From the IMG/VR virus record IMGVR_UViG_3300022921_000002, positions 124,001-188,000 of that record: a DNA stretch of 64,000 bases. One strand, written 5' to 3'. Made by a program: the position numbers and the translations under genes. Under the pieces are notes generated by a model. That model was not told the origin of the DNA. It ran no database searches and saw only the letters and a program-made list of their open reading frames with translations. This document shows positions 6,607-41,669 of the stretch, in pieces (position 1 is the first letter of the stretch; each line of letters opens with the position of its first letter).

Positions 6607-7119
6607 ATGGGAAAACCTACGAAACCTCGTAAGAAAAATTACGTCAACAATAAAGACTTATATGAAGCATTGATTGCATACAAAGGACGGATTAAAGAAG
6701 CAGAGGACAGTGGTGATGAAATTCCACGTGTTCCTGACTATATCGGCAAATGCATTTATCAGATCGCAACACGATTGGCAACTAAACCAAATTTTAGTGG
6801 CTATTCGTATAAGGAAGATATGATTAGTGACGGTATTGAGAATTGTCTACAATATATTAATAACTTTAATCCTGAGAAATCTCAAAACCCGTTTGCTTAC
6901 TTCACACAAATTATTTGGTTCGCATTTCTACGCCGTATTCAAAAAGAAAAGAAGCAAATGTATATTCGTTTTAAATCATCTCAACAAATGCTTGCATCAG
7001 GTGGTACCTATACAGGTGAAGATGTAACTCTTAACTTAACAACAAATGCTGATTATATGAACTCGTTCGTTCAGGATTTTGAAGATAAGTTGGCTAAGGA
7101 TAAAGCGAAAAAGAAATGA
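6607..7119 (+). CDS. 55: late sigma factor gp55
   Basis: NYVNNKDL...IG.CIYQIA.RLATKPNFSGYSYKEDMISDGIENC..YINNFNPEKSQNPFAYFTQI. Start moved to ATG 6607 (GGAGG RBS); the track's TTG start is the -35 hexamer. Confidence 0.95.
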   Translation: MGKPTKPRKKNYVNNKDLYEALIAYKGRIKEAEDSGDEIPRVPDYIGKCIYQIATRLATKPNFSGYSYKEDMISDGIENCLQYINNFNPEKSQNPFAYFTQIIWFAFLRRIQKEKKQMYIRFKSSQQMLASGGTYTGEDVTLNLTTNADYMNSFVQDFEDKLAKDKAKKK

Positions 7120-27417: not shown

Positions 27418-27608
27418 TGGCTTATGTTGTGACTCAAAAAGATAAACGTTGGCAGTTATACAATACGGAAAGTGACGAATGGATTGAAATAAATGTTAGT
27501 AAACGTGAGGCTAACAAGATGGCTCGTCGCCTAAACCTTGGGTCAGGTTTCTATCAATCACCTGTACCTTCCTTTTTTCAGAAATATAACAATTCAGCAG
27601 AATTATAA
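27417..27608 (+). CDS. hypothetical protein
   Basis: Coupled to the gp41 stop. Confidence 0.55.
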   Translation: MAYVVTQKDKRWQLYNTESDEWIEINVSKREANKMARRLNLGSGFYQSPVPSFFQKYNNSAEL

Positions 27609-27639
27609 ATAGTTTTAAATCAACACAGCGGAGCTTAAT

Positions 27640-28350
27640 ATGTTACGGTTTAAGACATTTATAAATGAGAAAAAAGATCCTGAAGCAAAGGAAAAGATGC
27701 ACCTTGCGCACTTTAATGACGAAGTAAATCGTGTTAAAAAAGAAACAGGCAAGGACCATGTGGTATTACATCATAATAACAAAAAGCATCAAATTACCCA
27801 TGCCGAAAAGGTTAGTGGTACACCGAAAGCCGATTTTAAACTACACGATAAAAAAGGCAATCACGTTTACGTTTCTCATAAGGATTATAAAGGTTCAGGT
27901 GATGCTGCTAAATCGTACAATCAATTAGGTGGTGTTTCAAAGTTTAAAGATCATCCCGCGGTTAAAAAATTCCAAAAAGCTATTGAAAAAGATCATGGTG
28001 GTACTGCCGAAGGAAAAGGCACTATTTCTATGCATCTCGACAATAAAAACAAACAACACCATGACCTAGTTAAAAAGGCATTGTTTGGTAAAGATCACGG
28101 CGGTAAGCACGGCAATGATGCGTGTCATAGTTTGATTCAAGGGCATATGAATTTGAAAAAGCATAAAGATGGGCATCATATTGACGCTCACCATATTATG
28201 CACCATGACGAGCCAATTAAACACGACTATCATATCTTTGCAAGAACAGCAAAAAGTGGTAGCTCAAAAAGAAACGATTTGGGACTAAAGCATACTCGTG
28301 TCGGCATTGGTATGAAAGCCGGGCGTAAAATATCTCACGAAGTTAAGTAA
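27640..28350 (+). CDS. His/Lys-rich putative head-packaged protein with PD-(D/E)XK-like motif
   Basis: TATAAATA at 27604; N-terminus MLRFKTFINE; TPKADF...VYVSHK. Confidence 0.55.
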   Translation: MLRFKTFINEKKDPEAKEKMHLAHFNDEVNRVKKETGKDHVVLHHNNKKHQITHAEKVSGTPKADFKLHDKKGNHVYVSHKDYKGSGDAAKSYNQLGGVSKFKDHPAVKKFQKAIEKDHGGTAEGKGTISMHLDNKNKQHHDLVKKALFGKDHGGKHGNDACHSLIQGHMNLKKHKDGHHIDAHHIMHHDEPIKHDYHIFARTAKSGSSKRNDLGLKHTRVGIGMKAGRKISHEVK

Positions 28351-29579
28351 TGAAAAAATTTAGTACATTATTAAACGAGGCTAAAAACCTGCATATGACC
28401 CATGCGGAAGATGCGGTTATTGACGGCGGTGTTATGGGAACACGTAACGTCATTAATCATCTACGAGATATACGGGATATGCTTGGCGGCACATCAAAAT
28501 CAGCGGTTAACATTAGTGTTAAGTGGGATGGCGCACCTGCTGTATTTGCAGGTACTGACCCGAGTGATGGTAAATTCTTTGTTGCCAAAAAAGGTATATT
28601 CAATAAGAACCCAAAAGTATATAAAACGCATGCTGAAATTGATGCGGATACAAGTGGTGAACTTGCAGTAAAATTAAAACTTGCTCTTGATGAGTTTTCA
28701 AAACTCGGTATCAAAGGTGTAGTACAAGGTGATTTTTTATATGAAAGAAGTGATATTAAAGAAGATACGATTGATGGAGAACCGCATATTACTTTCCATC
28801 CTAATACGATTGTTTATGCGGTACCAAAGTCGTCAGCCCTTGCTAAAGAAATACTCGGATCCAAGGTCGGTGTGGTCTGGCATACAGTCTATCGAGGAGA
28901 ATCATTTGAAACAATGTCAGCAAGTTTTGGAGAGGAGATTGCATCTGGACTCAAAAAGGTAAAATCCTGTTGGAGTGTTGATGCGGTATTCCGAGATCAA
29001 TCAGGTACAGCTAATATGACAAAAGCTGAAACCGATGCAGTAACACTTGCGCTATCAAACGCAGGTAAGTTATTCCGTATGGTACCGAAAAAGACATTAG
29101 ATGATGTTGCTAATAACGAAGATATCAATAAAAGATTAAACGTATATATTAATTCAAAGGTTCGTGAAGGACAGCGGGTTGGTAAACCTAAAGCTTTCAT
29201 TAAAGGATTTGAGAAATATATGAATACTTATTTTGATAAAGAAATCGCTGAAAAGAAATCACCTAAGGGTAAAGCGGCATGGCAAGGTAAAAAAGATGTT
29301 GCTATGAAGTTCTTTAAAACAAACAAATCAAAAGATCTTGAGAATATGTTTACAATGTATAATCACATCGTAGACGCAAAGCACCTTATTGTTAAAAAGC
29401 TTAACATGGTAGGTGGATTAAGAACCTTACTCAAAACGAGTAAAGGATATGAAGTAACAGGTCAAGAAGGGTTTGTCGCTATTGATAGGTATGGCAAAAA
29501 CGCATTAAAACTTGTTGACAGATTAGAATTTAGTAAAGCTAATTTCTCAGACAAGTATATCAAAGGGTGGACAAAATAA
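28350..29579 (+). CDS. conserved T4-like protein with covalent nucleotidyltransferase (ligase-like) motifs
   Basis: SVKWDGAP (KxDG), VVQGDFLY, GQEGFV, ALKLV; N-terminus MKKFSTLLNE-A. Confidence 0.6.
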   Translation: MKKFSTLLNEAKNLHMTHAEDAVIDGGVMGTRNVINHLRDIRDMLGGTSKSAVNISVKWDGAPAVFAGTDPSDGKFFVAKKGIFNKNPKVYKTHAEIDADTSGELAVKLKLALDEFSKLGIKGVVQGDFLYERSDIKEDTIDGEPHITFHPNTIVYAVPKSSALAKEILGSKVGVVWHTVYRGESFETMSASFGEEIASGLKKVKSCWSVDAVFRDQSGTANMTKAETDAVTLALSNAGKLFRMVPKKTLDDVANNEDINKRLNVYINSKVREGQRVGKPKAFIKGFEKYMNTYFDKEIAEKKSPKGKAAWQGKKDVAMKFFKTNKSKDLENMFTMYNHIVDAKHLIVKKLNMVGGLRTLLKTSKGYEVTGQEGFVAIDRYGKNALKLVDRLEFSKANFSDKYIKGWTK

Positions 29580-29866
29580 TGGCATGGGTTGACGTACCAG
29601 GATCACCAACAGTTTTAGTAAGTGGAACACCTACTGCGATTTGGCAATACGGTAACGCGCCATTAGCTGGTGAATACTATGAAGATGCAAATGGAACTGT
29701 TACAAATGGTATCAGATCTTTCACACCTCCAGGCGGCAATACACAAGAAACATATGTAAAGTGTCGTAAGGTTCAGCCAGCCGCAGGAGGAAAAATTTAT
29801 ACTGATTCCAACACGAACGGCCCTTGGTCTGAACTATCTAAAAACTATTTTGACACGAGGATTTAA
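29579..29866 (+). CDS. hypothetical (likely virion) protein
   Basis: ATG at 29579; Gly/Thr/Pro-rich beta-type sequence. Confidence 0.55.
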   Translation: MAWVDVPGSPTVLVSGTPTAIWQYGNAPLAGEYYEDANGTVTNGIRSFTPPGGNTQETYVKCRKVQPAAGGKIYTDSNTNGPWSELSKNYFDTRI

Positions 29867-29869
29867 CAG

Positions 29870-30655
29870 ATGGCTATTTGGAACAAACTAACTCAAGCTT
29901 TTTTACAAGGTAATAAAACTTTATTTGAAGCATTTGTTCTAGCAGATAAAGACGGCAATATTATCAACACATTTGGTTCGGCGTCTAATATTCCAATTGC
30001 TGCGGGGCAAGTAGATGGATATTCTCATATCAACAAGTTCGCTCATACAGGTGACGATATTAATGGTACGACTACTATTTGGGATGGTTCAAATGGTGTA
30101 TATACTTGGCCAACCGCAGCGGGTGTAGTAACAGTTGCTTCTTCGTCTCAAAGCGGTGAGACAGTTGTTGTTGAAGGACTTGACGTAAATTATAATATCG
30201 TATCAGAAGAAACAACAATTGGTGGAACAACCACCGCAGAATTTTATCGTATCTACCGTGCTTATATGACAGGCGATCAAAATGAGAATGATGTTACCTT
30301 CTCAATTGGTGGAACTACATACGCTATTATATTAGCAGACAACGGTCAAACTTTGATGAGTACCTATACAGTTCCTGCCGGTAAGACGGCGTATTTGATG
30401 CAATTGACTTGTACAATGGATAAAACAAATGCTCCAACATACTTTAGATTAATGTCACGTCCAGTAGATAATGGAACTGCATTTAATATTAAATCACAGC
30501 TTGGATCACAAGGTGGTAATCCAGTAAACTTTGAATATGCTGTACCTCTTAGGTTTCCAGAAAAAACTGACATTAAAGTTGATGTTATCACTGTCGGTTC
30601 AGTAGGTTGTGGTGCAACTTACGATTTAATATTAGTAGACAATCCTATTCCATAA
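29870..30655 (+). CDS. putative virion structural protein
   Basis: Gly/Thr-rich beta protein; late region. Confidence 0.6.
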   Translation: MAIWNKLTQAFLQGNKTLFEAFVLADKDGNIINTFGSASNIPIAAGQVDGYSHINKFAHTGDDINGTTTIWDGSNGVYTWPTAAGVVTVASSSQSGETVVVEGLDVNYNIVSEETTIGGTTTAEFYRIYRAYMTGDQNENDVTFSIGGTTYAIILADNGQTLMSTYTVPAGKTAYLMQLTCTMDKTNAPTYFRLMSRPVDNGTAFNIKSQLGSQGGNPVNFEYAVPLRFPEKTDIKVDVITVGSVGCGATYDLILVDNPIP

Positions 30656-30816
30656 GACAATTTGTCACTGTTGTCTAAACCGAATAACGGCTATTCCAAA
30701 TTGGTAACCCTTATTTACCTATTTTCCTAATAAATATATTTGTAAAAAGGATTAAACCTAGGCATACGGTCTAGGATCGGATCATACAACATACACATAT
30801 ATTAGAGGAAACGGAA

Positions 30817-31047
30817 ATGACACAAGCAATCCTTATGGCCCACAGCTACTCAACGAGGGCAATTGAAACTATCATTGAAGCATACAGAACTTTCAAACAA
30901 GAGAGAGCTGCAAAGAAAATAGCTAAACAAACCATCAAAGAATTATCTAAATTAACTGATAAAGAGTTAAACGATATTGGTCTCAGTAGAGGTGATATTT
31001 GGTACATTGCTCATAATCAAAACGATAATTTGAGAGGGTGGGTTTAA
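30817..31047 (+). CDS. DUF1127 (YjiS-like) small protein
   Basis: ELSKLTDKELNDIGLSRGDI signature. Confidence 0.88.
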   Translation: MTQAILMAHSYSTRAIETIIEAYRTFKQERAAKKIAKQTIKELSKLTDKELNDIGLSRGDIWYIAHNQNDNLRGWV

Positions 31048-31226
31048 TGACAACTTTAGTAGCAAACTATGTCTTTTCGCCCTTGTCGGGTTTGTGGTCT
31101 TCACTAGATCGTTATTCGCAAATGATTGGCTACAGCCGAGCGGCAGCGGAGCTCGCAAGAATGGGTATGATAGAGGAATCGAAACGTTGTATGATGGAAA
31201 TCGGGAGATTGCAAAATGACCGGTGA
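31047..31226 (+). CDS. small hypothetical protein
   Basis: ATG at 31047; [14 protein letters not shown]. Confidence 0.65.
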
Positions 31227-31440
31227 TATCGCAACAATGGGTGCCTTAATTGGCGCAGGGCTAGCAACATTCGGAATGGGTGGCGCTGCCATCGGAGTAG
31301 GAATGATTGTTGGTAGTGTACTAAAAGTAATGCCTAAGAAACCAGATACAGGTACAATGTTTGTTGGTATTGCGTTTGCTGAAGCATTAGGAATCTTCGC
31401 ATTTCTCGTAGCGCTTTTGCTAATGTTTGCCGTTGTCTAA
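31216..31440 (+). CDS. atpE: F0 ATP synthase subunit c homologue with altered polar loop
   Basis: [18 protein letters not shown] helix 1; MFVGIAFAE56[16 protein letters not shown] helix 2; GGGAG RBS. Confidence 0.9.
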
Positions 31441-31653
31441 ATGGGGCCAACAACACCTTCGGCTGAGATAGTCGATAAGGTTGGTTTTTACGCTTTCTTT
31501 GTAATGACACTTTTAACTGTAGTGTGTATTGCATTTGGATTTTTTGCGGTAATTCAAAAGTTTAAACAACCTAATTGGTCCGAAGCTTGCATTGAGGCAG
31601 GCGGAGTTCCAGTCAAATTAGCTAAGTCAACATTCGACTGTAAAGTAATATAA
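31441..31653 (+). CDS. small single-pass membrane protein with C-terminal Cys pair
   Basis: Hydrophobic stretch, then CIEAGG...DC. Confidence 0.6.
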   Translation: MGPTTPSAEIVDKVGFYAFFVMTLLTVVCIAFGFFAVIQKFKQPNWSEACIEAGGVPVKLAKSTFDCKVI

Positions 31654-31657
31654 ATAA

Positions 31658-31684
31658 AAAGGTGTTCATTAGTTGGGCACCTTT
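31658..31684 (+). terminator. hairpin closing the DUF1127-atpE unit
   Basis: AAAGGTGTTCA-TTAGT-TGGGCACCTTT; TATAAATA at 31649 just upstream. Confidence 0.5.
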
Positions 31685-31705
31685 CATCATTTTAAAGGTT
31701 ATATT

Positions 31706-32347
31706 ATGCCAGTCTTTACAGTTGAAATCAACAATAAAGTAGTTGAGTTTACGCATATACCAAAATGCGGCGGTACATCCGCAAAATGTATGATGCTTGA
31801 AGCATCAGGATTTGATTGGAGAAACTCCCCGGCAAATGATTGGGGATTGCCAATAAGCCAAAGAAAACATCAAAAACAAAATAACAAATTCATGGATCGG
31901 CATGGAAAAGGTAAATTTGGTAACGTAGATTATCGGTTTACTATTATCCGTGATCCTATTAAAAGACTTGTGTCTTGTTATACAAACCGAGTGTTATTTT
32001 ATAATAAGATGAGAAATCGTGGGTGGGATAATTTTGTTGATAACTTAGGTAACTATGCAGCAGGTGATATTTCTCACCATTCTTTTCCAATGACGTATTG
32101 GCTAGGTAACGATCCTAACCGATATGATAAGATCTTTACAGTATCACAGGTTAGCACAGATATGCGTGAATGGTTATCAGAAATTGCAAACACTGATGTA
32201 CCTGCGCTGCAGCGACAAGATGGTGGTAGAGAAAAACAAAGTAAAATTGTTATTACTAAAGATCAGATAACAAGAATTAAAAAATACTATAAAAATGATT
32301 ATGAGAATTGGTGGAATGATAAGGTTGTTCCACAGGAGTTTGTATAA
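31706..32347 (+). CDS. sulfotransferase family 2 protein
   Basis: 5'-PSB HIPKCGGTS; 3'-PB RDPIKRLVSCY. Confidence 0.8.
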   Translation: MPVFTVEINNKVVEFTHIPKCGGTSAKCMMLEASGFDWRNSPANDWGLPISQRKHQKQNNKFMDRHGKGKFGNVDYRFTIIRDPIKRLVSCYTNRVLFYNKMRNRGWDNFVDNLGNYAAGDISHHSFPMTYWLGNDPNRYDKIFTVSQVSTDMREWLSEIANTDVPALQRQDGGREKQSKIVITKDQITRIKKYYKNDYENWWNDKVVPQEFV

Positions 32348-33027
32348 TGTATATCCCAGAAATCAATACTTATTTTGTCCATGTTCCTAAAGCAGGTGGA
32401 ACAAGTGTTGAATTATTCTTTCTTCGTAATGTATGTGGTTATCCTGACTTTCAAGAAAGAAATATGTTTCGGCAATTTATAACAAAATACGGTGGGCGAA
32501 TAAATGCCTCACGGTATCATTTTGGACAACCAACACCTGAAATATTACCTACTGGTGAAACACAGCATTTATCAGCATGGCAATTGAAAGCTTGGAATGA
32601 TAAAGCCTTCACAGGATCTAAATATACATTTGCATTTGTCCGAAATCCTTTTCATAAATTTGTATCTGAGGTTATTTGGAAGCGTGAAAGGCTACCTGGT
32701 AAAGTAAATATGACATTTGAACAGCAGATTAGAGCTATGGAAATGGAATATCAGCGGAATAATATGAAAATACGTACTCCGCATAATGCACCGCAATGGA
32801 AGTTTGTATATGATGAAAAAGATAATCTTATTGTTGATGATGTATTTAGACTCGAGGAAATGGATAAAGCACAAAAGGTTATATCGGAAAAACTCGGCAT
32901 ACCTATAAACTTTGGGCATGAAAATAGAACAGCACGAAAAGATTATAAAGAATATTTGAATGCCAATTTAGTAAAACAACTTAAACCGTTAATTCAAAAA
33001 GATATGGAAGTATTCGGTTATGATTAA
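32347..33027 (+). CDS. sulfotransferase family 2 protein
   Basis: HVPKAGGTS; RNPFHKFVS; FRLEEM. Confidence 0.82.
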   Translation: MYIPEINTYFVHVPKAGGTSVELFFLRNVCGYPDFQERNMFRQFITKYGGRINASRYHFGQPTPEILPTGETQHLSAWQLKAWNDKAFTGSKYTFAFVRNPFHKFVSEVIWKRERLPGKVNMTFEQQIRAMEMEYQRNNMKIRTPHNAPQWKFVYDEKDNLIVDDVFRLEEMDKAQKVISEKLGIPINFGHENRTARKDYKEYLNANLVKQLKPLIQKDMEVFGYD

Positions 33028-33727
33028 AACATTATGGATATATTGGAATACAGGAATTAAAGCAGCACCTCCAATTGTTCATAAATGCGTTGACAGTTGG
33101 AAACACCATAATCCTACATGGAAAATAGTATTACTTGATAATACAAATCTTAGGGATTATTACAAAGGCACACAAAATGGGCGTAGCATTCAGGCATGGT
33201 CTGATGTTGTTCGCATTAACTTACTTAAAGAATACGGCGGAGTATGGGTAGATGCAACCGTTGCTTGTAATAAACCACTTGATAGTTGGTTACCTGCTCA
33301 TGCTAAAACCGGTTTCTTTGCGTTCCGAAAACCAAAACCTGATACCGAAGTTGCAAGTTGGTTTCTATATGCTGATAAAGATAATTGCATTGTGGATCGG
33401 TGGAAATTATTGGTTGATGAATATTGGAAGAACCGCCCAAATATGGATTATCTGTGGTTTCATGGTTTATTTAATAATGTATTAGAAGACCCTGCTTGTC
33501 AGACAATGTGGAACAAAACTAAACCATGGCTGGCTAATCATAAACCGCTTCCTGAAACACCTGACAACCCACATTGGTTTACACCATATAATGCCAGCCG
33601 ATGGACAAAAATAAGAAAACAAGGATTGCCATTAACAGGACCTTGTTATAAATTAGCACATGGAACATCTAGGAGAATGATCCAAGAACCTACTATTATG
33701 AGGATATTTAATTATGAAAGTAAATAA
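33020..33727 (+). CDS. capsular-polysaccharide-synthesis / GT32-like glycosyltransferase
   Basis: IW.YW..G...AP.IV..C..SW; SDVVRINLLKEYGGVWVDAT. Confidence 0.82.
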   Translation: MIKTLWIYWNTGIKAAPPIVHKCVDSWKHHNPTWKIVLLDNTNLRDYYKGTQNGRSIQAWSDVVRINLLKEYGGVWVDATVACNKPLDSWLPAHAKTGFFAFRKPKPDTEVASWFLYADKDNCIVDRWKLLVDEYWKNRPNMDYLWFHGLFNNVLEDPACQTMWNKTKPWLANHKPLPETPDNPHWFTPYNASRWTKIRKQGLPLTGPCYKLAHGTSRRMIQEPTIMRIFNYESK

Positions 33728-34475
33728 GTATTATATAATTTATACTAATGATAACCTATCAAAACAATACGCAAATGATGCTGCCGAGCAATGTAAAAAG
33801 CTTGGAGTAAATTATGAGTTATACGAAGGATGGAAACCACAAGGTGGTCCTGGTCAAATGTGGAGAAAGTTTACCGCTGAAACAGGAATTCCAATCAAAT
33901 CATTTAAAAGAATGATGGTTGGTGCTCATGGTTGTATGGCTTCTCATTTACAATTATGGCAAAGGATTGTTCAGAATAAAGAATGTGCTGTTATATTAGA
34001 ACACGATGGGATGATGCTTCATAAAGTAAAGTTGGATATTCCTGATAACAAAATCGTTGCGTTAGGATACAAATATAGAGAATGGGAAAACTATGACTAT
34101 AAAACCGCAGGTCAACCCGAAAGAATTAAAGATGTGAAATTTCATCCAGGTTCTCATGCGTATGCTATTACACACATTACCGCGCAGAAAATGATTGATG
34201 AAGTAACAAAGGTAGGTGTTACCGAGGCAATTGATAATCGTTGGTTTATGAGCAGTCGGAAAAATTTTACTAAAATACCAATGGCTATTTGTGATCCTAT
34301 AGCAGCAATTGGGTGGTTAAGATTATCAACTATTCAGAAATATAGTGCCACTCATAATAATCATGCCGAAATGTTAGAATCTTTTAAGAACAACTTTAAA
34401 GGTCAGCTAAAGGAATCAATCGTTATACCCAAAGGGTCTGTAAATATTATAAATAGAAACAAAATCAGAGAATAG
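33714..34475 (+). CDS. glycosyltransferase family 25-like
   Basis: GCMASHLQLWQRIV, ILEHD, GSHAYAIT. Confidence 0.75.
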   Translation: MKVNKYYIIYTNDNLSKQYANDAAEQCKKLGVNYELYEGWKPQGGPGQMWRKFTAETGIPIKSFKRMMVGAHGCMASHLQLWQRIVQNKECAVILEHDGMMLHKVKLDIPDNKIVALGYKYREWENYDYKTAGQPERIKDVKFHPGSHAYAITHITAQKMIDEVTKVGVTEAIDNRWFMSSRKNFTKIPMAICDPIAAIGWLRLSTIQKYSATHNNHAEMLESFKNNFKGQLKESIVIPKGSVNIINRNKIRE

Positions 34476-34484
34476 AGGTATCTT

Positions 34485-37400
34485 ATGGCAGACGAAAGCA
34501 ATAAGGACAAAAAGAAAAAGGTTAAGGGATTTAAAGAATTTGATCCTGGAAACTATATTGATATTGAACCTACTATCAATGAAGCAAAAGTAGGCGAGGT
34601 TGTTATTTCTTGGGGACGTATGAACCCTATTACAACTGGGCACGAAAAACTTATCAATAGAGTTTTAAATGTAGCAAAATCAAAGAATGCTATTCCTGCT
34701 GTATTTTTAACACATTCTCAAGATAAAACAAAAAATCCATTGTCATATAATGATAAGATCAAATATGCCGAGGTAGCATTTGGTAAAATCATTAAAAGAT
34801 CAACTGCCAAGACAATCATTCAATTAATGCAGCAGTTACAAAAGAAATTTAAAAAGGTAACTCTCGTTGTTGGTTCTGACCGATATAAAGAGATGGATAC
34901 ATTGCTTAACAAATACAATGGTAAAGAATATAAATTTGATGAAATAGAAGTTGTATCCGCAGGTGCTAGAGATCCTGACGCTGAAGGTGTTAAAGGAATG
35001 TCAGCATCAAAAATGCGTGAGTATGCTGTTTCAGATAATATCAAAAAGTTTACTACAGGATTACCTAGTAAGCTAAAAACAAGCGCGGCCGACATTATGG
35101 CCAGCATTAAAAAGGGAATGGGAATGTCGGAAGAATATAACGAAGATAACTTTATCGAAGAAGATGAATTAGACGAAGCTTTGACTCGACAGCAGCGTAT
35201 TAAACGCGGCCGTCAAATGCGAAGAATGCGTGTTAAAATGAAACGAGGTCGGGAAAAGGCAAAGCGGCGCCGTGCCAATATTGATGTTTTGAAAAGAAGA
35301 TCAAGAAAAGCAGCACGTAATATAATTAAAAAGCGTCTTGCTGGTAATAAACGATATGCTGATATGGAGCCTGCGGAAAAGGAACGTATTGATAAACGCA
35401 TTGAAAAGATTTCAAAACAACGTATTGATAACCTGGCAATTAAATTGTTACCTTCTGTTAAAAAGAAAGAACGTGAGAGATTACAAGCACGTCATAATAA
35501 GAATGAGTCTGTTGATCTGAATGAGATGTGGGGTGCATATGTAACTAAGCGACCACATATGCTTATGGATAAAAACAACAAACCAAAGTTTGATAAACGG
35601 TTTAAGATGTTTAAACCTAAACAAGTTACAGAGATGAATGAGTTTGATATTGAAGATATCGTTGAACTTATGGAATCAGTTGAAAAATTTACCGAAACAA
35701 CAGGTAAATATTACACAGGTGTTGCTAAAAATAAGAAAGATGACCGTGAAGATCATTTTGAACGTAATGCTAAAAAGGCTGATGATGATCCTTCAGCATA
35801 TAGGCCAGCACCAGGTGATAAAGAAGCAAAGACAAAAGAATCAAAGCATACAAAAAAAGCACGAGCGATGGGTTACACTGAAGAATTTGATTTTTTAGGT
35901 GAAGATGCCGCAGGCAAATCATTAGCTGATAAAGCAAAGAAATCTGACATGCCTGCAGGGATTTTACGTAAAGTATATAACCGTGGTGTTGCCGCATGGA
36001 AAACAGGTCACCGCCCAGGAACAACACCTGAACAATGGGGACATGCTCGAGTAAATTCATTTATTACTAAATCCTCTGGTACATGGGGTAAGGCTGATAA
36101 AGACCTTGCTGCAAAGGTTAATGAATCAGTAGAAACAGTTAATGAAGTTAGGAGAAACGCTATGGCTGCCAAGCCTAAGAACACTAAAGCAGAACGTGAG
36201 AGTAGACTAGCACAGAATATGAAAAAATTAAAGGATATGCGTAAATCTGATAAGTCTTGGGGTAAATCAAGCGCATTTGATTATCACGAGGAAGTAGAAC
36301 TTGACGAATTAACAGCAGCTGAGAAAAAGCTAGTAAATCAAATGTATGATAAAAAAGGCAACCTCACACCACATGGTAAAAAAGTAATGAACCACGGTAA
36401 GAAAAAAGGTGATAAAGGTTTTGTTGAATCGTTAGATGATAAGTTTGAAGCATTCATCTCACTTAATGAAGCCGCAACGCCTCAAATGAAAAAGGCAGCT
36501 GCAAGTATCGAAGCATATGCAAAGAAAAGCGGTGGCATTGATAAAGCAGACTTTATGAAAGCAGCAAAGATGCTATCATCTGGTAATGCTGGTATAAAAT
36601 TCGTTAAATTTGTAGATGATCTTGATACAGAACCACGCGAATGGTTAATCACTAATCTTGCTAAGACTATGGGTAAACAAACAGTTGAAAAAATGTTTAA
36701 AGTTAAAATCCGTGAAGAAGTAGAACTAGATGAAGCCGAAATGAGCCTATATGATAAAATAAAGGCAGCAAGAGCAAACCCATCACCAGACAAGCCTGCA
36801 AGAGGTCGTGGATCAAAAAATCGTAATCCAAAAACTTATGACCCACGCAAAGCACTAGACAAAGAAGATGATCGTCTTCAAGGTATGGTAAAGAAAAAAT
36901 TGAAAAAAGAAGAGTTTGAACTTGATGAAGATCTTACACACCAGACAGTAAAGCCACCGAATCATACTAAAAAGTTTTCTGGGAAAGATTCTCGTGACAC
37001 ACAAGACACATCGGCGAATGAGTGGGATGCGCCAGGTAATAAGCGTCATACTGTAACGAGTAGTCAAGCAGATGCTCATGATAAAACTGCTGCACATCAC
37101 AATGAGGTTGCGGATGCTCATACAAAGGCAGGCGAAAAATCTTCTAGTCCAACTTTACAAAGATTGCATCACCAAGCCTCAGTCCATCATAAGAAGGCAG
37201 CAGAAGCACACTTTAATGCTTCTCATTCTAGTTCAGGTGCAGATAAAGATGGTTCTATTCAAAAAAAGGCAAAGGATCTGCATATGGCATACCATCTAAC
37301 TATGCATGCTAACAAGATGTCTCAAGAAGTAAGAAATAAGGGTTCTAAAGCAAAGCGTATCCTTGAAGAAGTAGAAGAGCTTGATGAAGATGCTAAAATG

Positions 37401-37748
37401 AAAAAGCAATCTGATGATAACCTAAAAAGTTTACATAAGCAATTCAAAGGTCAAGATCAAAAAATGCCATCAACTCAGCATATGATGAAGCGTATCACTA
37501 AAGAAATGAAACGCCGTAATATGGGTGAGTCTGAAGAAGCAGCAAAGTTAGCATCTGTTGCTAACGGTGGTGTTCAGGATAAAGAAGATAAATTTAGAAA
37601 TGCATTAAACCGTGTTCGTAATAAAAAATCAATGAAAGATGAAAGCTCTTGTGGATCATCAAAGAAAAGAAATGAAGAAGCTGGCGCAGGCGAAGAAGGT
37701 ACAGCTAAATTAGTTAAAAGACTAAAGAAGGATACACCTAATGCATAG
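34485..37748 (+). CDS. 1087-aa virion polyprotein: N-terminal cytidylyltransferase-like (HxGH) domain plus modules separated by L/I-x-E sites
   Basis: GRMNPITTGHEKL, LVVGSDR, SAGARDPD, MSASKMR; repeated EEVELDE linkers; TATAAATA at 34448. Confidence 0.8.
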   Translation: MADESNKDKKKKVKGFKEFDPGNYIDIEPTINEAKVGEVVISWGRMNPITTGHEKLINRVLNVAKSKNAIPAVFLTHSQDKTKNPLSYNDKIKYAEVAFGKIIKRSTAKTIIQLMQQLQKKFKKVTLVVGSDRYKEMDTLLNKYNGKEYKFDEIEVVSAGARDPDAEGVKGMSASKMREYAVSDNIKKFTTGLPSKLKTSAADIMASIKKGMGMSEEYNEDNFIEEDELDEALTRQQRIKRGRQMRRMRVKMKRGREKAKRRRANIDVLKRRSRKAARNIIKKRLAGNKRYADMEPAEKERIDKRIEKISKQRIDNLAIKLLPSVKKKERERLQARHNKNESVDLNEMWGAYVTKRPHMLMDKNNKPKFDKRFKMFKPKQVTEMNEFDIEDIVELMESVEKFTETTGKYYTGVAKNKKDDREDHFERNAKKADDDPSAYRPAPGDKEAKTKESKHTKKARAMGYTEEFDFLGEDAAGKSLADKAKKSDMPAGILRKVYNRGVAAWKTGHRPGTTPEQWGHARVNSFITKSSGTWGKADKDLAAKVNESVETVNEVRRNAMAAKPKNTKAERESRLAQNMKKLKDMRKSDKSWGKSSAFDYHEEVELDELTAAEKKLVNQMYDKKGNLTPHGKKVMNHGKKKGDKGFVESLDDKFEAFISLNEAATPQMKKAAASIEAYAKKSGGIDKADFMKAAKMLSSGNAGIKFVKFVDDLDTEPREWLITNLAKTMGKQTVEKMFKVKIREEVELDEAEMSLYDKIKAARANPSPDKPARGRGSKNRNPKTYDPRKALDKEDDRLQGMVKKKLKKEEFELDEDLTHQTVKPPNHTKKFSGKDSRDTQDTSANEWDAPGNKRHTVTSSQADAHDKTAAHHNEVADAHTKAGEKSSSPTLQRLHHQASVHHKKAAEAHFNASHSSSGADKDGSIQKKAKDLHMAYHLTMHANKMSQEVRNKGSKAKRILEEVEELDEDAKMKKQSDDNLKSLHKQFKGQDQKMPSTQHMMKRITKEMKRRNMGESEEAAKLASVANGGVQDKEDKFRNALNRVRNKKSMKDESSCGSSKKRNEEAGAGEEGTAKLVKRLKKDTPNA
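36288..37388 (+). repeat. dispersed EE(V/F)E(E)LDE-coding linker repeats
   Basis: GAGGAAGTAGAACTTGACGAA 36288, GAAGAAGTAGAACTAGATGAA 36714, GAAGAGTTTGAACTTGATGAA 36909, GAAGAAGTAGAAGAGCTTGATGAA 37365. Confidence 0.8.
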
Positions 37749-38013
37749 CTTCAAGCAACATTTGGAAGCATGCTGGTCTGATTACAAACAGGTTGGCATG
37801 AAGAAAAAAGGTGACAAGATGGTACCTAATTGTGTACCAAAGAATGAAAGTATTCCACCTGAAGTTGTGGGTGCGGCAATTGCTGCTCCTATGGTTGCAC
37901 AAGGTATTAAGCATACCGCAAAAGGTGTTGCCAAAGCAGTTAAAGGTGCTATTAAGGCACGTAGAGCTATTAAGAATGCAGGTCAACGAATTGCTGATAA
38001 GGTAGTAAAATGA
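37741..38013 (+). CDS. putative internal head protein
   Basis: MHSFKQHLEA; CW..Y..VG.KKKG.KMVPNCVP; cationic amphipathic tail. Confidence 0.65.
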   Translation: MHSFKQHLEACWSDYKQVGMKKKGDKMVPNCVPKNESIPPEVVGAAIAAPMVAQGIKHTAKGVAKAVKGAIKARRAIKNAGQRIADKVVK

Positions 38014-38297
38014 AAACATTTAAACAATATATCTTTGCTGAGCATACACAATGTGGAACACCTGATTGTTGTGGTGAATGTGATACCGCCGTTACCGAAG
38101 GCTCAGAAACCTGGGAAGCTGGATATAAGCGCCGTGTTGTAAAAACAACTGATCCTGACCATAAAGAGGCAGGACATAATTGGCGTATTAAAGGTAAAGA
38201 TAAATCTCATCTTACTATTAAATTATATAAAGAAAAGCCTTCACAACAAGAATTCAATAAACAAATGAAAAGAGTTGCAGGACACGAGTTCGGATGA
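38010..38297 (+). CDS. putative internal head protein with Cys cluster
   Basis: MKTFKQYIFAE; HTQCGTPDCCGEC. Confidence 0.7.
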   Translation: MKTFKQYIFAEHTQCGTPDCCGECDTAVTEGSETWEAGYKRRVVKTTDPDHKEAGHNWRIKGKDKSHLTIKLYKEKPSQQEFNKQMKRVAGHEFG

Positions 38298-38587
38298 AAA
38301 GCTTTAAGCAATATATTTCTGAAGGTATCATGGTTAAACTGATTCGTGGTAAAGGCCAGGATACTTTAAAAATGAAAGACACTAAAGAAAAGAGTTGGGT
38401 TGAATTACGCGGCAAACCTAATTTTGAAACTAAATATGATAAAAGGGATCCGTTACATAAAGCAATTACGGCGCTAGGTAAATCGGCAAGCATATCTGAT
38501 TTTATGAATGGTGATGAAGTAAGTATAAATCCAAACCATCCTGACGGTAAGAAAGCGTTGGCAACTATAAAGAAGTTAATGAAATGA
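38294..38587 (+). CDS. putative internal head protein
   Basis: MKSFKQYISE, close to the T4 capsid-targeting sequence MKTYQEFIAE. Confidence 0.7.
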   Translation: MKSFKQYISEGIMVKLIRGKGQDTLKMKDTKEKSWVELRGKPNFETKYDKRDPLHKAITALGKSASISDFMNGDEVSINPNHPDGKKALATIKKLMK

Positions 38588-38850
38588 AAACATTTAAACA
38601 ACATATGGAAGCAACATACCAAGGTAAAGAGGTTAAGTTAAACAAACCTATGGCGGGTGATGTTGCTAAATCAAAAGTATTCGTTGATCCTGATGGCGAC
38701 GGTGTTGCTAAAAAAGTTAATTTTGGTGACAAGAATATGACAATTAAAAAGCATATTCCAGGTCGACGTAAATCTTTTAGAGCAAGACATAATTGCGATA
38801 ATCCTGGGCCAAAAGATAAGGCACGATATTGGTCTTGTAAAGCCTGGTAA
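38584..38850 (+). CDS. putative internal head protein
   Basis: MKTFKQHMEA; KSFRARHNCD...ARYWSCKAW. Confidence 0.7.
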   Translation: MKTFKQHMEATYQGKEVKLNKPMAGDVAKSKVFVDPDGDGVAKKVNFGDKNMTIKKHIPGRRKSFRARHNCDNPGPKDKARYWSCKAW

Positions 38851-38888
38851 ATATTATAAATAAAACAAACAGCAAATAGAGAAGTAAT

Positions 38889-39233
38889 ATGTATAGTTTT
38901 TCAGAACATAGTCTTATTGAACACGTTGAGGCACATCTCATTGAGAATGATCTTGTACTTGATAATATAGATGACGAACAACTTGACGAAATCATCGGTA
39001 TGGCCGCAAAGGCTGTAGGGGCAGTTGCTAAGGTAGGTGCAAAAGGTGTTCGACGAGCATTAACAAATAAACAAGGTCAATTCCGTTTATCAACTGCTGG
39101 GCGTAATACGGCACGTGCTAATAAAGCAAAACGTATTAATGATAGAGCAAATGCTATCCGTGATAGAAAAACCACAAAGGCGAATATTGACAAGGCCAGA
39201 GAAAACTTACGCAAAGCAAGAGAGGGAAAATAA
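38889..39233 (+). CDS. putative virion protein: acidic pro-part and cationic C-terminus
   Basis: TATAAATA at 38856; EQLDE followed by IIGMAAKAVGAVAKVGAKGVRR. Confidence 0.65.
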   Translation: MYSFSEHSLIEHVEAHLIENDLVLDNIDDEQLDEIIGMAAKAVGAVAKVGAKGVRRALTNKQGQFRLSTAGRNTARANKAKRINDRANAIRDRKTTKANIDKARENLRKAREGK

Positions 39234-39234: not shown

Positions 39235-39798
39235 ATGGACACGAATACAGTTAGAGAAGCAATTATTGATGCCCTCGGTCGAGTAGGTGAACTCGACGAA
39301 AAGAAAATGGATCCAGTGGGGCAGGCTGACGCAGATATTGATAACGATGGAGACGTTGATAATTCAGATGAATATCTTCACAAACGTCGCAAAGCTATCA
39401 AAAAGGCTATGAAAGAAGAGCAAGAAGCTCGCTTAAATGAAGCAACAGCTATGACTGCTGGGCCAAAAGGTAGCTTAGGCGGAATTGGTAAAAAACCATC
39501 TATGCCTGCTCCTGGAGATAGTAAAAGAACTATTAATGCTCCAAAAGGAACCGCACGTCATCATGCCGATATGGCAGCAAAACATCAGCAGTCAGCTGAG
39601 CATCACGGAAGAAGAGCATCTGAACATGAGGATGAAGGAAATGATGATAAAGCAGATCATCATTATGATAAAATGCAACATCACGATAATGCGGCTGATG
39701 CGCATCAGCATGCACAAGATATGATTAAGAAACACGGTTCCGATCATCCTGAAGCTCAAAAAGCATCTAAAGAAGCTAATAAGCATAAATTATCATAA
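39235..39798 (+). CDS. virion protein with DxDxDGDVD motif and His-rich tail
   Basis: Start at ATG 39235; ELDE, DADIDNDGDVDNSDEYLHKRRKAI, RLNE, His-rich C-terminus. Confidence 0.7.
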   Translation: MDTNTVREAIIDALGRVGELDEKKMDPVGQADADIDNDGDVDNSDEYLHKRRKAIKKAMKEEQEARLNEATAMTAGPKGSLGGIGKKPSMPAPGDSKRTINAPKGTARHHADMAAKHQQSAEHHGRRASEHEDEGNDDKADHHYDKMQHHDNAADAHQHAQDMIKKHGSDHPEAQKASKEANKHKLS

Positions 39799-39835: not shown

Positions 39836-40138
39836 ATGGCACTTTGGGGAAAAACCGACACATTAGCAGATGTTCCAAAATGGTTGGAAGACGACGCTAA
39901 TAATACAAACAAATCAAATGATCGCGACAACGCGGTGTTTGTTGACCTTACAGAAGCTGGAGTTGCAGCTAACAGAGCAAAAGGTTTGACAGGTCCGGGC
40001 TGGTGGTTGTACCACACATCAAATGGCCGTCATTATGCAGAATGCTTGGTACCAATGAAAGTATCCGCGGGAGATGCAGGTGACCTTGGTGTAACAGGTG
40101 ATACTGCTGTTGAAGACTTAATCGTAGCTGATACTTAA
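39836..40138 (+). CDS. putative virion structural protein (MALWG type)
   Basis: AATAAATA late motif, AAGGAG RBS; PGWWLY...GR..AECLV.M. Confidence 0.65.
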   Translation: MALWGKTDTLADVPKWLEDDANNTNKSNDRDNAVFVDLTEAGVAANRAKGLTGPGWWLYHTSNGRHYAECLVPMKVSAGDAGDLGVTGDTAVEDLIVADT

Positions 40139-40154
40139 GTAAAGAAAATATAAT

Positions 40155-40529
40155 ATGAAATTAACAGAATCAACCTTTCTGTTATTTGCCGCAAAACATT
40201 ATGATAATCCACAATGCTCCGACGTATCAGAGTTTGAAGAGGATTTAAAACGTTTTCATTATTTACGAAAACTATTTGGCAGATATAGGCAAGATAAAGA
40301 TTTAAAAGAAAGGTTGATTCTGAATCACCTGATAATCATATATAACGTATTCGGTGAACAAGCAACGAGTATTTTGTTTATGAGACTTTATGAATACCAT
40401 GATTATTTAAAACCGTTTGTTGAATACTTAAACTTCATGCCTACGGTTATTGAATATGATGGGATTATTATACACAAGGATAGTATTGTGTCTGATAAGT
40501 GTATTAAAGAAAAACTCGAAGGAATTTGA
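40155..40529 (+). CDS. conserved T4-like hypothetical protein
   Basis: FLLFAAKHYDNPQC...EFEEDLKRF.YLRKLF.RY...LKERLILNHLI. Confidence 0.75.
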   Translation: MKLTESTFLLFAAKHYDNPQCSDVSEFEEDLKRFHYLRKLFGRYRQDKDLKERLILNHLIIIYNVFGEQATSILFMRLYEYHDYLKPFVEYLNFMPTVIEYDGIIIHKDSIVSDKCIKEKLEGI

Positions 40530-40532
40530 CCC

Positions 40533-41669
40533 ATGGTCGTTGATCTATTTTTAGTTTACCAATTCATCCGCCGTTTGGCTACACCATTTAATAAGTGGGA
40601 AGCATATAAGCAAGGTATTATTGATAAAGATGGTAAAGTATTAATCAAATCAAAAGATTTTACAAAAGGTTCTCAACGTAAAGCGTGGGGAATTTTTGAT
40701 AGAATGATTGCTAACCTTAAAAAGTTGTTGGCAAAGGTACCTGGCGGTAGTTCTCAGTTTGCATCATATGCTGCCGCATTGTTTCTAATTAAAGAATACA
40801 AACATTTTACCGATGAATCATTACTAAATGAAGAATGGACTGATGAACAATTAGATGAATCAATGCATTTATTTCATATTAGATATAATCATTATACCAT
40901 ACTCTCCGAAAATGTCAATGGTTATTTTGATGAACTTGATGAAAAACTTAAAGCATCAGATGATATGGGTGTGTGGGTAAAAGATTTTCAGAAATCAGAT
41001 GCACCACAATTCAAAGGCAAATCTCAAAAGAAAAGACAACAAATGGCCGTTGCTGCAAAGCTTGACGCAATGGATGAAGAATTACAAGAAGGCGCATTTA
41101 AAAGAATAGCACAAGTGCAATCAAATAAAGCAGATCGTATGGCTTCAAACGACAAAAAAGGTTTGGATACGTATAAGAAAAAACCAAAAACTGAAATTAA
41201 AGAAGCTGCTTCTCCACGTTGGAAAAAAGCTGGACCAAACGGCGAAATACAAGCCACTATTGGTGGAAAGAAATATCAAATAGAAAAATCCTTAGATCAC
41301 AATGAACGCCATAAAGGTGAGTGGAAAGTTATGGTTTGGGATAAGCGTAGAAACAGCTGGGAGTGGGAAACCACTGAGTACGGTAAAGCCAACGCTAAAG
41401 ATTGGATTATGGATAGACTAAAAGAATCAGCTACTAATATGCGTAATATAAAACTTGTTAATAAAATCAAGAAGTCTGGTGTTGTAAAATCTGGTTCTAT
41501 GTCACAGAATGATCCCAAAAAATCTGTTGATACAAAACCTGAAATTACAGAAGAAATGCCAGCCAATGCAGTAAGTACCGGTGCAATTGCTAATATGGAT
41601 GCGTCGGGAATTGATAACAAAAAGAAAAAGAAAAAGATTAAGGATATGATGAGGAGAACCCTACAATGA
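40533..41669 (+). CDS. conserved T4-like N-terminal domain fused to additional L/I-x-E-delimited modules
   Basis: DLFLVYQFIRRLATPFNKWEAYKQGIIDKDG; internal ELDE, LQE, IKE, LKE, ITE. Confidence 0.7.
   Translation: MVVDLFLVYQFIRRLATPFNKWEAYKQGIIDKDGKVLIKSKDFTKGSQRKAWGIFDRMIANLKKLLAKVPGGSSQFASYAAALFLIKEYKHFTDESLLNEEWTDEQLDESMHLFHIRYNHYTILSENVNGYFDELDEKLKASDDMGVWVKDFQKSDAPQFKGKSQKKRQQMAVAAKLDAMDEELQEGAFKRIAQVQSNKADRMASNDKKGLDTYKKKPKTEIKEAASPRWKKAGPNGEIQATIGGKKYQIEKSLDHNERHKGEWKVMVWDKRRNSWEWETTEYGKANAKDWIMDRLKESATNMRNIKLVNKIKKSGVVKSGSMSQNDPKKSVDTKPEITEEMPANAVSTGAIANMDASGIDNKKKKKKIKDMMRRTLQ

What the first reader, a model, noticed from the sequence alone, without database searches (positions are those of the whole stretch)
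27640..39233. At least seven genes share a T4 capsid-targeting-like N-terminus
Seen: MLRFKTFINE (27640), MKKFSTLLNE (28350), MHSFKQHLE (37741), MKTFKQYIFAE (38010), MKSFKQYISE (38294), MKTFKQHME (38584), MYSFSEHSLIE (38889), in blocks headed by TATAAATA late promoters. Known: T4 internal proteins use MKTYQEFIAE for packaging, and IPI blocks the GmrSD nuclease. Inference: a large set of uncharacterised injected proteins, good candidates for anti-defence factors.
Basis: partly seen in the sequence, partly recalled or inferred. Interest (0 to 1): 0.65.

Follow-up and report, generated by a model that had tools for sequence, protein, structure and literature searches.

The report
Capsid-targeting leaders on phage head cargo
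A 221-kb T4-like marine phage puts the same ten-residue "address label" that T4 uses to load proteins into its head on at least eight unrelated late genes, among them a restriction-enzyme-like nuclease and a ligase-like enzyme, so it probably injects a varied protein kit with its DNA.

Summary
All seven N-termini are the first Met of conserved ORFs.

The leader (M-x-x-F-K-x-F/Y/H-I/L-x-E) matches T4 IPII/IPIII (MKTYQEFIAE) and IPI (MKTFKEF…) at the positions known to matter in T4.

- The genome has a gp21-type protease, a T4-type scaffold and TATAAATA late promoters before both head genes and these blocks.
- In about 80 related contigs the leader sits on at least 19 unrelated protein families. 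Leaderless homologues in other viruses start where the leader ends.
- Leader-bearing cytidylyltransferase homologues were found in three published cyanophage virion proteomes.

New here:
- ORF 27640 has an MspI/HhaI/HinP1I-like nuclease fold.
- ORF 28350 (DUF6267) has a ligase-like fold.
- The 1087-aa neighbour looks like a polyprotein with five EVELDE linkers, a motif shared with the scaffold.

Packaging and cleavage are well supported but not shown. Anti-defence function and an alphaproteobacterial host are unsupported. I class this as a new member of a known kind.

The parts
27604..27611 (+). TATAAATA late-promoter motif heading the block 27640-~31650
   Evidence: The same octamer lies 25-60 nt before the gp21, gp22, gp23 and sheath genes.
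27640..28350 (+). Leader MLRFKTFINE plus a 226-aa basic, His-rich MspI/HhaI/HinP1I-like PD-(D/E)XK nuclease fold (phrog_13937)
   Evidence: AF2 model pLDDT 89. VIA matches: MspI Z 8.0, HhaI 6.7, HinP1I 6.6, next 4.5. Foldseek gives the same top three and the Atlas search points the same way. Invariant K63, D65, S79, K81, Q95. 12 of 49 family members carry the leader.
28350..29579 (+). Leader MKKFSTLLNE plus DUF6267, a covalent nucleotidyltransferase (RNA/DNA ligase-like) fold
   Evidence: Pfam PF19782 starts at residue 13. Invariant K58-x-D60-G61. Model pLDDT 82, residues 1-15 disordered. Top VIA matches are RNA/DNA ligases, best Z 8.4. Cyanophage orthologues lack the leader and start MAKNTHLEH.
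34448..34455 (+). TATAAATA late-promoter motif heading the operon 34485-38850
34485..37748 (+). 1087-aa probable polyprotein. It has a Lys-rich N-terminus with an embedded leader-like stretch (KGFKEF…YIDIE), a cytidylyltransferase/NMNAT-like domain, DUF5824 and further modules. The modules are separated by five E-x-ELDE linkers (motif starts at residues 228, 605, 747, 812, 965).
   Evidence: Modules recur in relatives' polyproteins starting right after …ELDE. ELDE is 6-fold enriched in 46 homologous polyproteins. Homologues with a leader were found in three virion proteomes.
37741..38013 (+). Leader MHSFKQHLE plus an 81-aa basic protein (CW..YKQVG…VPNCVP motif and a basic tail)
   Evidence: In relatives the module is stand-alone with a leader, fused to other modules, or inside polyproteins.
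38010..38297 (+). Leader MKTFKQYIFAE plus an 84-aa Cys-rich protein
38294..38587 (+). Leader MKSFKQYISE plus an 87-aa basic protein (best-scoring leader in the genome)
   Evidence: Five homologues in relatives, all with a leader.
38584..38850 (+). Leader MKTFKQHME plus a 79-aa domain (phrog_7595) that is leaderless in sipho- and podoviruses and an archaeal spindle virus
38855..38862 (+). TATAAATA late-promoter motif heading 38889 onward
38889..39233 (+). Variant leader MYSFSEHSLIE plus a 103-aa basic protein (pI 10.4)
   Evidence: The homologue in L049 starts MHSFKSYIIIE.
39235..39798 (+). 187-aa protein without the leader but with ELDE at residues 19-22; a possible further protease substrate

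Best explanation
These genes encode internal head proteins of a T4-like marine myovirus. Each carries a 9-11-residue N-terminal capsid targeting sequence (CTS) with the consensus M-[K/L/I]-x-F-K-x-[F/Y/H]-[I/L]-x-E.

Proposed mechanism:
1. The genes are transcribed late, together with the head genes.
2. The leader docks the protein onto the gp22-type scaffolding core while the prohead assembles.
3. The gp21-type prohead protease cuts after the Glu of the (I/L)-x-E motif. The leader and scaffold fragments leave; the basic mature protein stays in the head with the DNA.
4. The mature protein is ejected into the cell at infection.

The 1087-aa neighbour probably enters as one polyprotein and is cut at five E-x-ELDE linkers into separate modules. 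The four small genes behind it are the same kind of module, each with a leader of its own.

The cargo is a mixed kit:
- an MspI-like nuclease fold;
- a ligase-like nucleotidyltransferase;
- an NMNAT/cytidylyltransferase-like enzyme;
- several small basic proteins.

Shown here: the motif, its specificity for N-termini, its conservation across unrelated cargoes, the promoter, protease and scaffold context, and the folds.

Inferred: targeting, cleavage, retention in the head, ejection, and any activity in the host.
For: 1. Motif match to T4. T4 ipII and ipIII start MKTYQEFIAE and ipI starts MKTFKEF…. In T4, residues 4 and 7 direct targeting, residues 8 and 10 direct processing, and gp21 cuts after L/I-x-E (PMC9026906). 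In 106 leaders from this genome and its relatives, position 7, which the search pattern left free, is F or Y in 96. Position 4 is F, position 8 is I or L in 96, and position 10 is E, but these three were required by the search pattern.

2. Specificity. The profile scan separates the leader genes cleanly from 6,024 Met positions. In relatives, 122 hits lie on the coding strand and 4 on the other.

3. Machinery.
- Peptidase_S77 protease, E = 2e-36.
- T4_CASP scaffold.
- A sigma-like protein carrying Sigma70 region 2, possibly the gp55-type late sigma factor.
- The major capsid protein has LLSE|AAP where T4 gp23 has FLTE|AEIGG (the T4 cleavage position is from memory).
- The eighth leader gene sits between portal and protease, where T4 has its core proteins gp67/gp68 (gp68 position; T4's portal position is from memory).

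4. The leader is an add-on.
- At least 19 unrelated families carry it.
- 26 families occupy the slot upstream of DUF6267.
- Homologues in sipho- and podoviruses and an archaeal virus start exactly where the leader ends. The same holds for DUF6267 in cyanophages and for 37 of 49 members of the nuclease family.

5. The constraint is on the protein. Third codon positions of F4, K5 and E10 vary roughly as in the background.

6. Published virion proteomes. The cytidylyltransferase homologues S-SCSM1 ORF91 (MKSFLQFLKE), S-SZBM1 ORF140 (MRFRQFIIE) and S-CREM2 gp154 (MKNFSSFLTE) were all detected in CsCl-purified virions (PMC9602691, PMC9146016, PMC10665884).

7. All nine predicted mature proteins have pI 8.4-10.4, against a genome median of 5.4. 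Mature T4 IPs have pI 9.0-9.7.

8. ELDE occurs in only four proteins of the genome: five times in the polyprotein, once each in two neighbouring proteins, and once in the scaffold.

9. The leader is disordered in both AF2 models.
Against: - There is no direct evidence of packaging, cleavage or ejection for this uncultured phage.
- The published proteomes give no N-terminal peptides, and their authors note that co-purification is possible.
- Two leaders (…QHLE, …QHME) lack I/L at position -3. ORF 38889 is an 11-mer with Ser at position 5.
- Some orthologues lack the leader (DUF6267 in cyanophages, most members of the nuclease family), so packaging is not essential to these proteins.
- Fold matches are moderate (Z 6.6-8.4), and no catalytic activity is shown.
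- A nuclease packed next to the phage's own DNA needs an explanation. Only leads exist: CCGG depletion and a C5 methyltransferase gene.
- The complex prediction of scaffold with ORF 38294 gave no answer.
Confidence: 0.75

Rival explanations
1. The leader-bearing proteins are prohead core or scaffold accessory proteins, like T4 gp67/gp68. They enter the prohead through the leader but are degraded and expelled during maturation, so they are assembly factors and not injected effectors.
For: - The eighth gene lies in the gp67/gp68 position between portal and protease.
- The scaffold shares the ELDE motif.
- The small proteins are basic and of low complexity.
- In T4, core proteins are cut into fragments that leave the head.
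Against: - Two cargoes have well-folded enzyme-like domains of 226 and 399 aa.
- The domain of ORF 38584 exists in viruses with no T4-type head, so it has a function outside assembly.
- Cytidylyltransferase homologues persist in mature virions.
- The slot is hypervariable, which is unlike an assembly factor.
Confidence: 0.12
2. The shared 5' end acts at the nucleic-acid level. It would be a conserved translation-initiation region, or a short homology patch that lets gene cassettes recombine into these loci. The peptide itself would have no role.
For: - The loci are mosaic, with modules that move between genes.
- Modular shuffling through conserved cassettes is known in T4-type phages (PMC2839356, PMC4122927).
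- The codons are A/T-rich.
Against: - Third codon positions vary roughly as in the background, and positions 2, 3, 6 and 9 vary in residue.
- Conservation follows residue class (aromatic at 4 and 7, aliphatic at 8, Glu at 10), matching the mutational map of the T4 CTS.
- 76 distinct 36-nt versions exist.
- A recombination role could coexist with targeting.
Confidence: 0.05
3. The genes are paralogues of one family. The N-terminus is simply the best-conserved remnant of common descent and carries no targeting function.
For: - The genes are clustered.
- The small ones are of similar size (88-114 aa) and all are basic.
Against: - The mature parts fall into at least 19 families with no similarity at E < 1e-5.
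- They have different folds: nuclease versus ligase-like.
- Leaderless homologues exist in unrelated viruses.
Confidence: 0.03

Closest known systems
T4 internal proteins IPI, IPII, IPIII and their capsid targeting sequence (Mullaney & Black 1996; review PMC9026906)
   Same: - A roughly 10-residue N-terminal leader with an aromatic residue at 4 and 7, I/L at 8 and Glu at 10. MKTFK is identical between T4 ipI and ORFs 38010 and 38584.
- A gp21-type protease and a gp22-type scaffold are present.
- Mature forms are basic.
- Cargoes vary between related phages.
   Different: - The mature parts are unrelated to IPI/II/III.
- There are more tagged genes (8-10 against 3).
- Cargo includes enzyme-like folds and a probable polyprotein.
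- The lineage is far from the T-evens (DNA polymerase 44-45% identical to cyanophages, its closest cultured relatives).
- The promoters before T4's ip genes are not TATAAATA in the 60 nt read; here the blocks have late promoters.
T4 Alt (packaged ADP-ribosyltransferase) and the ejection proteins of giant phages phiKZ, 201phi2-1 and SPN3US
   Same: Large enzymes or many proteins are packaged in the head and trimmed by a gp21-related protease after Glu at short motifs, often at several sites.
   Different: - Giant phages use S/A-x-E and have no single short shared leader.
- Alt's leader was not retrieved here (from memory only).
- No ADP-ribosyltransferase domain was found in this window.
Virion-associated NMNAT/cytidylyltransferase of T4-like cyanophages (S-SCSM1, S-SZBM1, S-CREM2)
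   Same: - Homologous domain: 40% identity to residues 39-212 of the 1087-aa ORF.
- Same position downstream of the gp41-type helicase in S-SCSM1 and S-SZBM1; in S-CREM2 the gene lies after the late sigma factor gene.
- The leader is present.
   Different: - The cyanophage proteins are 286-409 aa and single-domain. Here the domain heads a 1087-aa multi-module protein.
- The papers read here did not link virion presence to a targeting leader.
Monomeric type IIP restriction endonucleases MspI, HinP1I and HhaI
   Same: - The fold of ORF 27640 (Z 8.0, 6.6, 6.7).
- An invariant D…S-x-K arrangement resembling their D…(N/Q)-x-K (the motif of the solved enzymes is from memory).
   Different: - About 10-14% sequence identity.
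- No adjacent methyltransferase; a C5 methyltransferase lies 72 kb away.
- It carries a capsid-targeting leader.
- Activity and specificity are unknown.

Membership tests
T4-type CTS-tagged internal head proteins | N-terminal leader of about 10 residues with targeting residues at positions 4 and 7 and processing residues at 8 (I/L) and 10 (Glu) | tested here: met
   Three of the seven window genes (27640, 28350, 38294) and the eighth gene outside the window are exact 10-mers with F4, I/L8 and E10. Two are 9-mers (H-L/M-E) and two are 11-mers. The relatives' logo agrees. T4 residue roles come from PMC9026906.
T4-type CTS-tagged internal head proteins | gp21-type prohead protease and gp22-type scaffolding core encoded by the same phage | tested here: met
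   PF03420, E = 2e-36, and PF25623, E = 5e-64.
T4-type CTS-tagged internal head proteins | Expression together with the head genes | tested here: inconclusive
   The same TATAAATA motif stands before these blocks and before the head genes. The region lies in contigs of metatranscriptome libraries, but this does not show timing, and DNA carry-over is possible.
T4-type CTS-tagged internal head proteins | Physical presence in the mature head | not testable with these tools
   Indirect only: leader-bearing cytidylyltransferase homologues in three published virion proteomes.
T4-type CTS-tagged internal head proteins | Removal of the leader by the prohead protease after Glu | not testable with these tools
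   - The motif fits L/I-x-E.
- Leaderless homologues begin at the predicted cut.
- The homologous cleavage site is kept in the major capsid protein.
T4-type CTS-tagged internal head proteins | Ejection into the host with the DNA | not testable with these tools
   None.
IPI-type inhibitors of GmrSD (anti-restriction) | Sequence or fold relation of the mature protein to IPI* | tested here: not met
   BLASTP aligns only the leaders; there is no significant match of the mature parts. Folds of the small proteins were not predicted.
PD-(D/E)XK restriction endonucleases of the MspI/HinP1I/HhaI group (ORF 27640) | Shared fold over most of the chain | tested here: met
   MspI Z 8.0 over 173 residues, HhaI 6.7, HinP1I 6.6, next 4.5. 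Foldseek gives the same top three at E 0.01-0.03.
PD-(D/E)XK restriction endonucleases of the MspI/HinP1I/HhaI group (ORF 27640) | Catalytic Asp…(Asn/Gln)-x-Lys in place, and DNA cleavage | tested here: inconclusive
   Invariant D65…S79-x-K81 in 32 sequences. Superposition on the catalytic residues was not checked and activity is not testable here.
ATP-dependent RNA/DNA ligases, covalent nucleotidyltransferases (ORF 28350, DUF6267) | Nucleotidyltransferase fold with motif I Lys-x-Asp-Gly | tested here: met
   Invariant K58, D60, G61. 15 of the top 21 VIA matches (and all of the top 15) are RNA or DNA ligases, with Z 5.8-8.4. There was no match by sequence profile to the PDB.

The most novel reading that the evidence does not exclude
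The T4 capsid-targeting system is conserved across the marine Kyanoviridae-like phages. There it loads a rapidly exchanged kit of active enzymes, delivered either singly or as a polyprotein that the prohead protease cuts at EVELDE linkers. The kit includes an injected restriction-endonuclease-like nuclease that attacks unmodified host or competitor DNA, while the phage's own DNA is spared through CCGG depletion and C5 methylation. It also includes a ligase-like enzyme and an NMNAT-like enzyme.
Probability: 0.25. Interest if true: 0.8.

Novelty: new member of a known kind. Interest (0 to 1): 0.6.

Why it matters
- It gives a simple sequence rule for listing the proteins that abundant marine T4-like phages (cyanophages, pelagiphages, OM43 phages and uncultured relatives) load into their heads and probably inject.
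- It explains why cytidylyltransferase/NMNAT-like enzymes keep turning up in cyanophage virion proteomes, something the authors could not settle.
- The tagged set is large and turns over quickly between relatives, which is the pattern expected of host-takeover or counter-defence factors.
- If a restriction-like nuclease and a ligase-like enzyme are really delivered with the DNA, that would widen the known repertoire of phage first-strike proteins.
- The leader could also serve as a packaging tag for engineering non-coli T4-like phages.

Tried and rejected
- Nucleotide search of the region against cultured phages found no match.
- Pfam and NCBIfam gave nothing for five of the seven proteins.
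- Profile searches of DUF6267 and of the nuclease family against PDB sequences gave nothing meaningful.
- Foldseek alone was weak for both models. Only the exhaustive aligner gave clear family-level matches.
- Complex prediction of the gp22 scaffold with ORF 38294 returned no answer, which is no evidence either way.
- The idea that the 1087-aa ORF starts at a GTG giving MKGFKEF was rejected, because the codon is GTT.
- S-CREM2 gp112 (408 aa, abundant in virions) was checked as a possible DUF6267 homologue and is not one.
- A 57-aa frame with MVQFSEHMF upstream of the portal gene overlaps the tail-tube gene and was set aside as spurious.
- The TATAAATA count in the window is not above chance. 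Its weight comes from position and strand.
- Literature searches found no paper linking a CTS to cyanophages or Kyanoviridae. Subscription papers are not covered.
- The large protein searches were not used.

Full report
**Context.** The window is bases 124001-188000 of a 221,447-bp viral contig rated complete. It is a T4-like myovirus. Its genes include a gp43-type polymerase, a gp41-type helicase, a portal, a Peptidase_S77 prohead protease, a T4_CASP scaffold, a major capsid protein, and sheath and baseplate genes. The closest cultured relatives by DNA polymerase are cyanophages at 44-45% identity. The DNA is found in many salt-marsh and seawater metagenomes.

- All seven N-termini stand at the stated coordinates as the first Met of + strand ORFs.
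- A loose pattern finds 18 matches in the six-frame translation, against 5.7 in shuffles. The stricter form finds nine, eight of which are true ORF starts.
- A position matrix built only from leaders of related contigs was scanned over all 6,024 Met positions of this genome. It puts seven leader genes on top (scores 10.2-27.4), and the next score is 4.3.
- ORF 38889 is an 11-residue variant that the fixed-length matrix misses. Its homologue in L049 has a regular leader.
- An eighth gene lies outside the window: genome 211223-210015, minus strand, 402 aa, MKSFKQKLAE. It sits between portal and protease, where T4 keeps its core proteins gp67/gp68 (gp68 position; T4's portal position is from memory).

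**Promoters.**
- TATAAATA stands at 27604, 31649, 34448 and 38855. The count is not above chance, but all eight copies in the window are on the gene strand.
- Genome-wide the motif lies 25-60 nt before the protease, scaffold, capsid and sheath genes.
- A sigma-like protein is encoded at 6607-7119; its Sigma70 region 2 match suggests the gp55-type late sigma factor, though no gp55 family was matched.
- The four small genes at 37741-38850 follow the 1087-aa gene with overlapping stop and start codons.

**Match to the T4 capsid targeting sequence.**
- From the T4 record, ipII and ipIII start MKTYQEFIAE and ipI starts MKTFKEF….
- According to PMC9026906, the first ten residues of IPIII suffice for packaging. 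Residues 4 and 7 matter for targeting, residues 8 and 10 for processing, and gp21 cuts after L/I-x-E.
- ORF 27640 has Phe at positions 4 and 7, Ile at 8 and Glu at 10. ORFs 28350 and 38294 and the eighth gene keep F4, I/L8 and E10 but differ at position 7 (Leu, Tyr, Lys). Two leaders are 9-mers ending H-L/M-E and two are 11-mers.
- The major capsid protein keeps LLSE|AAP where T4 gp23 has FLTE|AEIGG (the T4 cleavage position is from memory).
- The protease itself starts MKLITEIFNE.

**Comparative evidence.**
- Eighty related contigs were fetched around the DUF6267 gene. They hold 122 leader-bearing ORFs on the coding strand and 4 on the other.
- Together with this genome's eight leader genes, these ORFs fall into at least 19 families with unrelated mature parts. 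Position 7, which the search pattern left free, is Phe or Tyr in 96 of 106.
- The slot just upstream of DUF6267 holds 26 different families in 77 loci, many of them tagged.
- The cultured phages Melnitz, C48C1, DLP_6 and HTVC008M show the same leader on orthologues and on other small ORFs.
- Third codon positions in the conserved codons vary roughly as in the background, so the constraint is on the peptide.

**The leader is an add-on with a sharp boundary.**
- The domain of ORF 38584 occurs in sipho- and podoviral pelagiphages, roseophages and a Nitrosopumilaceae spindle-shaped virus. There it starts MAKYQG…, exactly where the leader of 38584 (MKTFKQHME|ATYQG…) ends.
- Cyanophage DUF6267 starts MAKNTHLEH, again at the predicted cut.
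- In the nuclease family, 12 of 49 members carry the leader in front of an otherwise shared start.

**Published experiments on relatives.** Cytidylyltransferase/NMNAT-like proteins were detected in CsCl-purified virions of three cyanophages, and all three start with the leader:

| Phage | Protein | N-terminus | Source |
|---|---|---|---|
| S-SCSM1 | ORF91 | MKSFLQFLKE | PMC9602691; |
| S-SZBM1 | ORF140 | MRFRQFIIE | PMC9146016; |
| S-CREM2 | gp154 | MKNFSSFLTE | PMC10665884; |

They are homologous to the first domain of the 1087-aa ORF; for example, S-SCSM1 ORF91 is 40% identical to its residues 39-212. The authors could not decide between true packaging and co-purification. The leader offers a mechanism.

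**The 1087-aa ORF as a polyprotein.**
- ELDE occurs in only four proteins of the genome: five times here (in E-x-ELDE contexts), once each in the neighbours at 39235 and 40533, and once in the scaffold as VVELDE, right where its Pfam domain begins.
- Modules of this protein recur in relatives' polyproteins, starting directly after …ELDE.
- The motif is six-fold enriched in 46 homologous polyproteins, with consensus E-E-V-E-L-D-E|A.
- The small modules of 37741, 38010 and 38584 occur in relatives in three forms: as stand-alone tagged ORFs, fused under one leader, or as C-terminal parts of the polyprotein.
- The N-terminus has a Lys-rich extension followed by KGFKEF…YIDIE, resembling the long IPI leader.

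**What the cargo is.**
- *ORF 27640.* Model pLDDT 89. It matches MspI (Z 8.0 over 173 residues), HhaI (6.7) and HinP1I (6.6), and the next match scores 4.5. Foldseek and the Atlas feature search agree. D65, S79 and K81 are invariant.
- *ORF 28350 (DUF6267).* Model pLDDT 82. K58-x-D60-G61 is invariant, and all fifteen top matches are RNA or DNA ligases, with Z up to 8.4. It is a conserved gene found in 463 phage records.
- *All mature forms.* They are basic (pI 8.4-10.4, against a genome median of 5.4), like mature T4 IPs. None resembles IPI, IPII or IPIII beyond the leader.

**Leads only.** CCGG is the most depleted 4-bp palindrome (observed/expected 0.42), and the genome encodes a C5 cytosine methyltransferase. 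Both would fit self-protection against an MspI-like enzyme, but neither shows it.

**Verdict.** I put the reading 'T4-type capsid-targeted, protease-trimmed head proteins' at about 0.75. Ejection and anti-defence function remain inference. The mechanism is the known T4 one, so this is a new member of a known kind. The added points are enzyme-like cargo, a probable polyprotein and wide conservation in marine T4-like phages, which the papers I could search do not describe.

**Compliance with the operators' notes.** Read laying was given 5,501 letters.

Noticed in passing
window 31649-34475: A TATAAATA late promoter heads four transferase genes: two Sulfotransfer_2 (PF03567), one Caps_synth/DXD glycosyltransferase (PF05704) and one GT25 (PF01755). 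Late-expressed sulfo- and glycosyltransferases in a phage may modify virion proteins or the cell surface.
   Followed up: partly
whole genome; C5 methyltransferase at genome 79476-80699 (-), outside the window: CCGG is the most depleted 4-bp palindrome (190 found, 450 expected), followed by CATG (O/E 0.49). ATCGAT is absent (14 expected). A C-5 cytosine DNA methylase (PF00145) is encoded 72 kb from the MspI-like ORF 27640.
   Followed up: partly
window 27640-28350: The mature nuclease-like protein has 30 His in 226 residues, in runs such as HHNNKKH and HHIMHH. It also lacks the roughly 100-aa N-terminal domain present in most family members.
   Followed up: no
genome 1-2791 and 217320-219897 (outside the window): Both ends of the linear contig carry diverged copies of the same four-gene cassette (N-termini MAIAN.FYN…, MATN.YF.NYDN…, M.QP..R.EFK…, MAASFYIKQNDTAPS…). 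This could be a real duplication or an assembly joining two strains.
   Followed up: no
window 38584-38850: This small domain (…LNKP…RHNCDNPGPK.KARYWSCK.W) is shared with pelagiphage sipho- and podoviruses, roseophages, a Flavobacterium myovirus (there after …EELDE) and a Nitrosopumilaceae spindle-shaped archaeal virus.
   Followed up: partly
window 30817-31653: Four small ORFs (59-76 aa) lie between the tagged block and the transferase block. At least two look like membrane proteins by their hydrophobic stretches. Only one has a PHROG match.
   Followed up: no
window 35973-36007, 36514-36583, 37670-37719, 38772-38812: In metagenome and metatranscriptome contigs, short pieces from other organisms match only these conserved module motifs and run on into unlike sequence on both sides. 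This fits modules shared among co-occurring phages.
   Followed up: no
window 39836-41669: The genes after the tagged block are conserved virion-region genes of this phage group: a 'MALWG…' head protein (phrog_613; its counterparts are virion proteins in S-SCSM1 and S-SZBM1), DUF7207, and a 378-aa protein with one ELDE.
   Followed up: partly
L036:5608-6210 (related contig): One leader-tagged cargo in a relative is a HAD-superfamily phosphatase-like protein (weak PF03767 match, E = 8e-6, below the curated cutoff; DxDxT-like start IFDIDETLF). It is another enzyme-like cargo in the variable slot.
   Followed up: no
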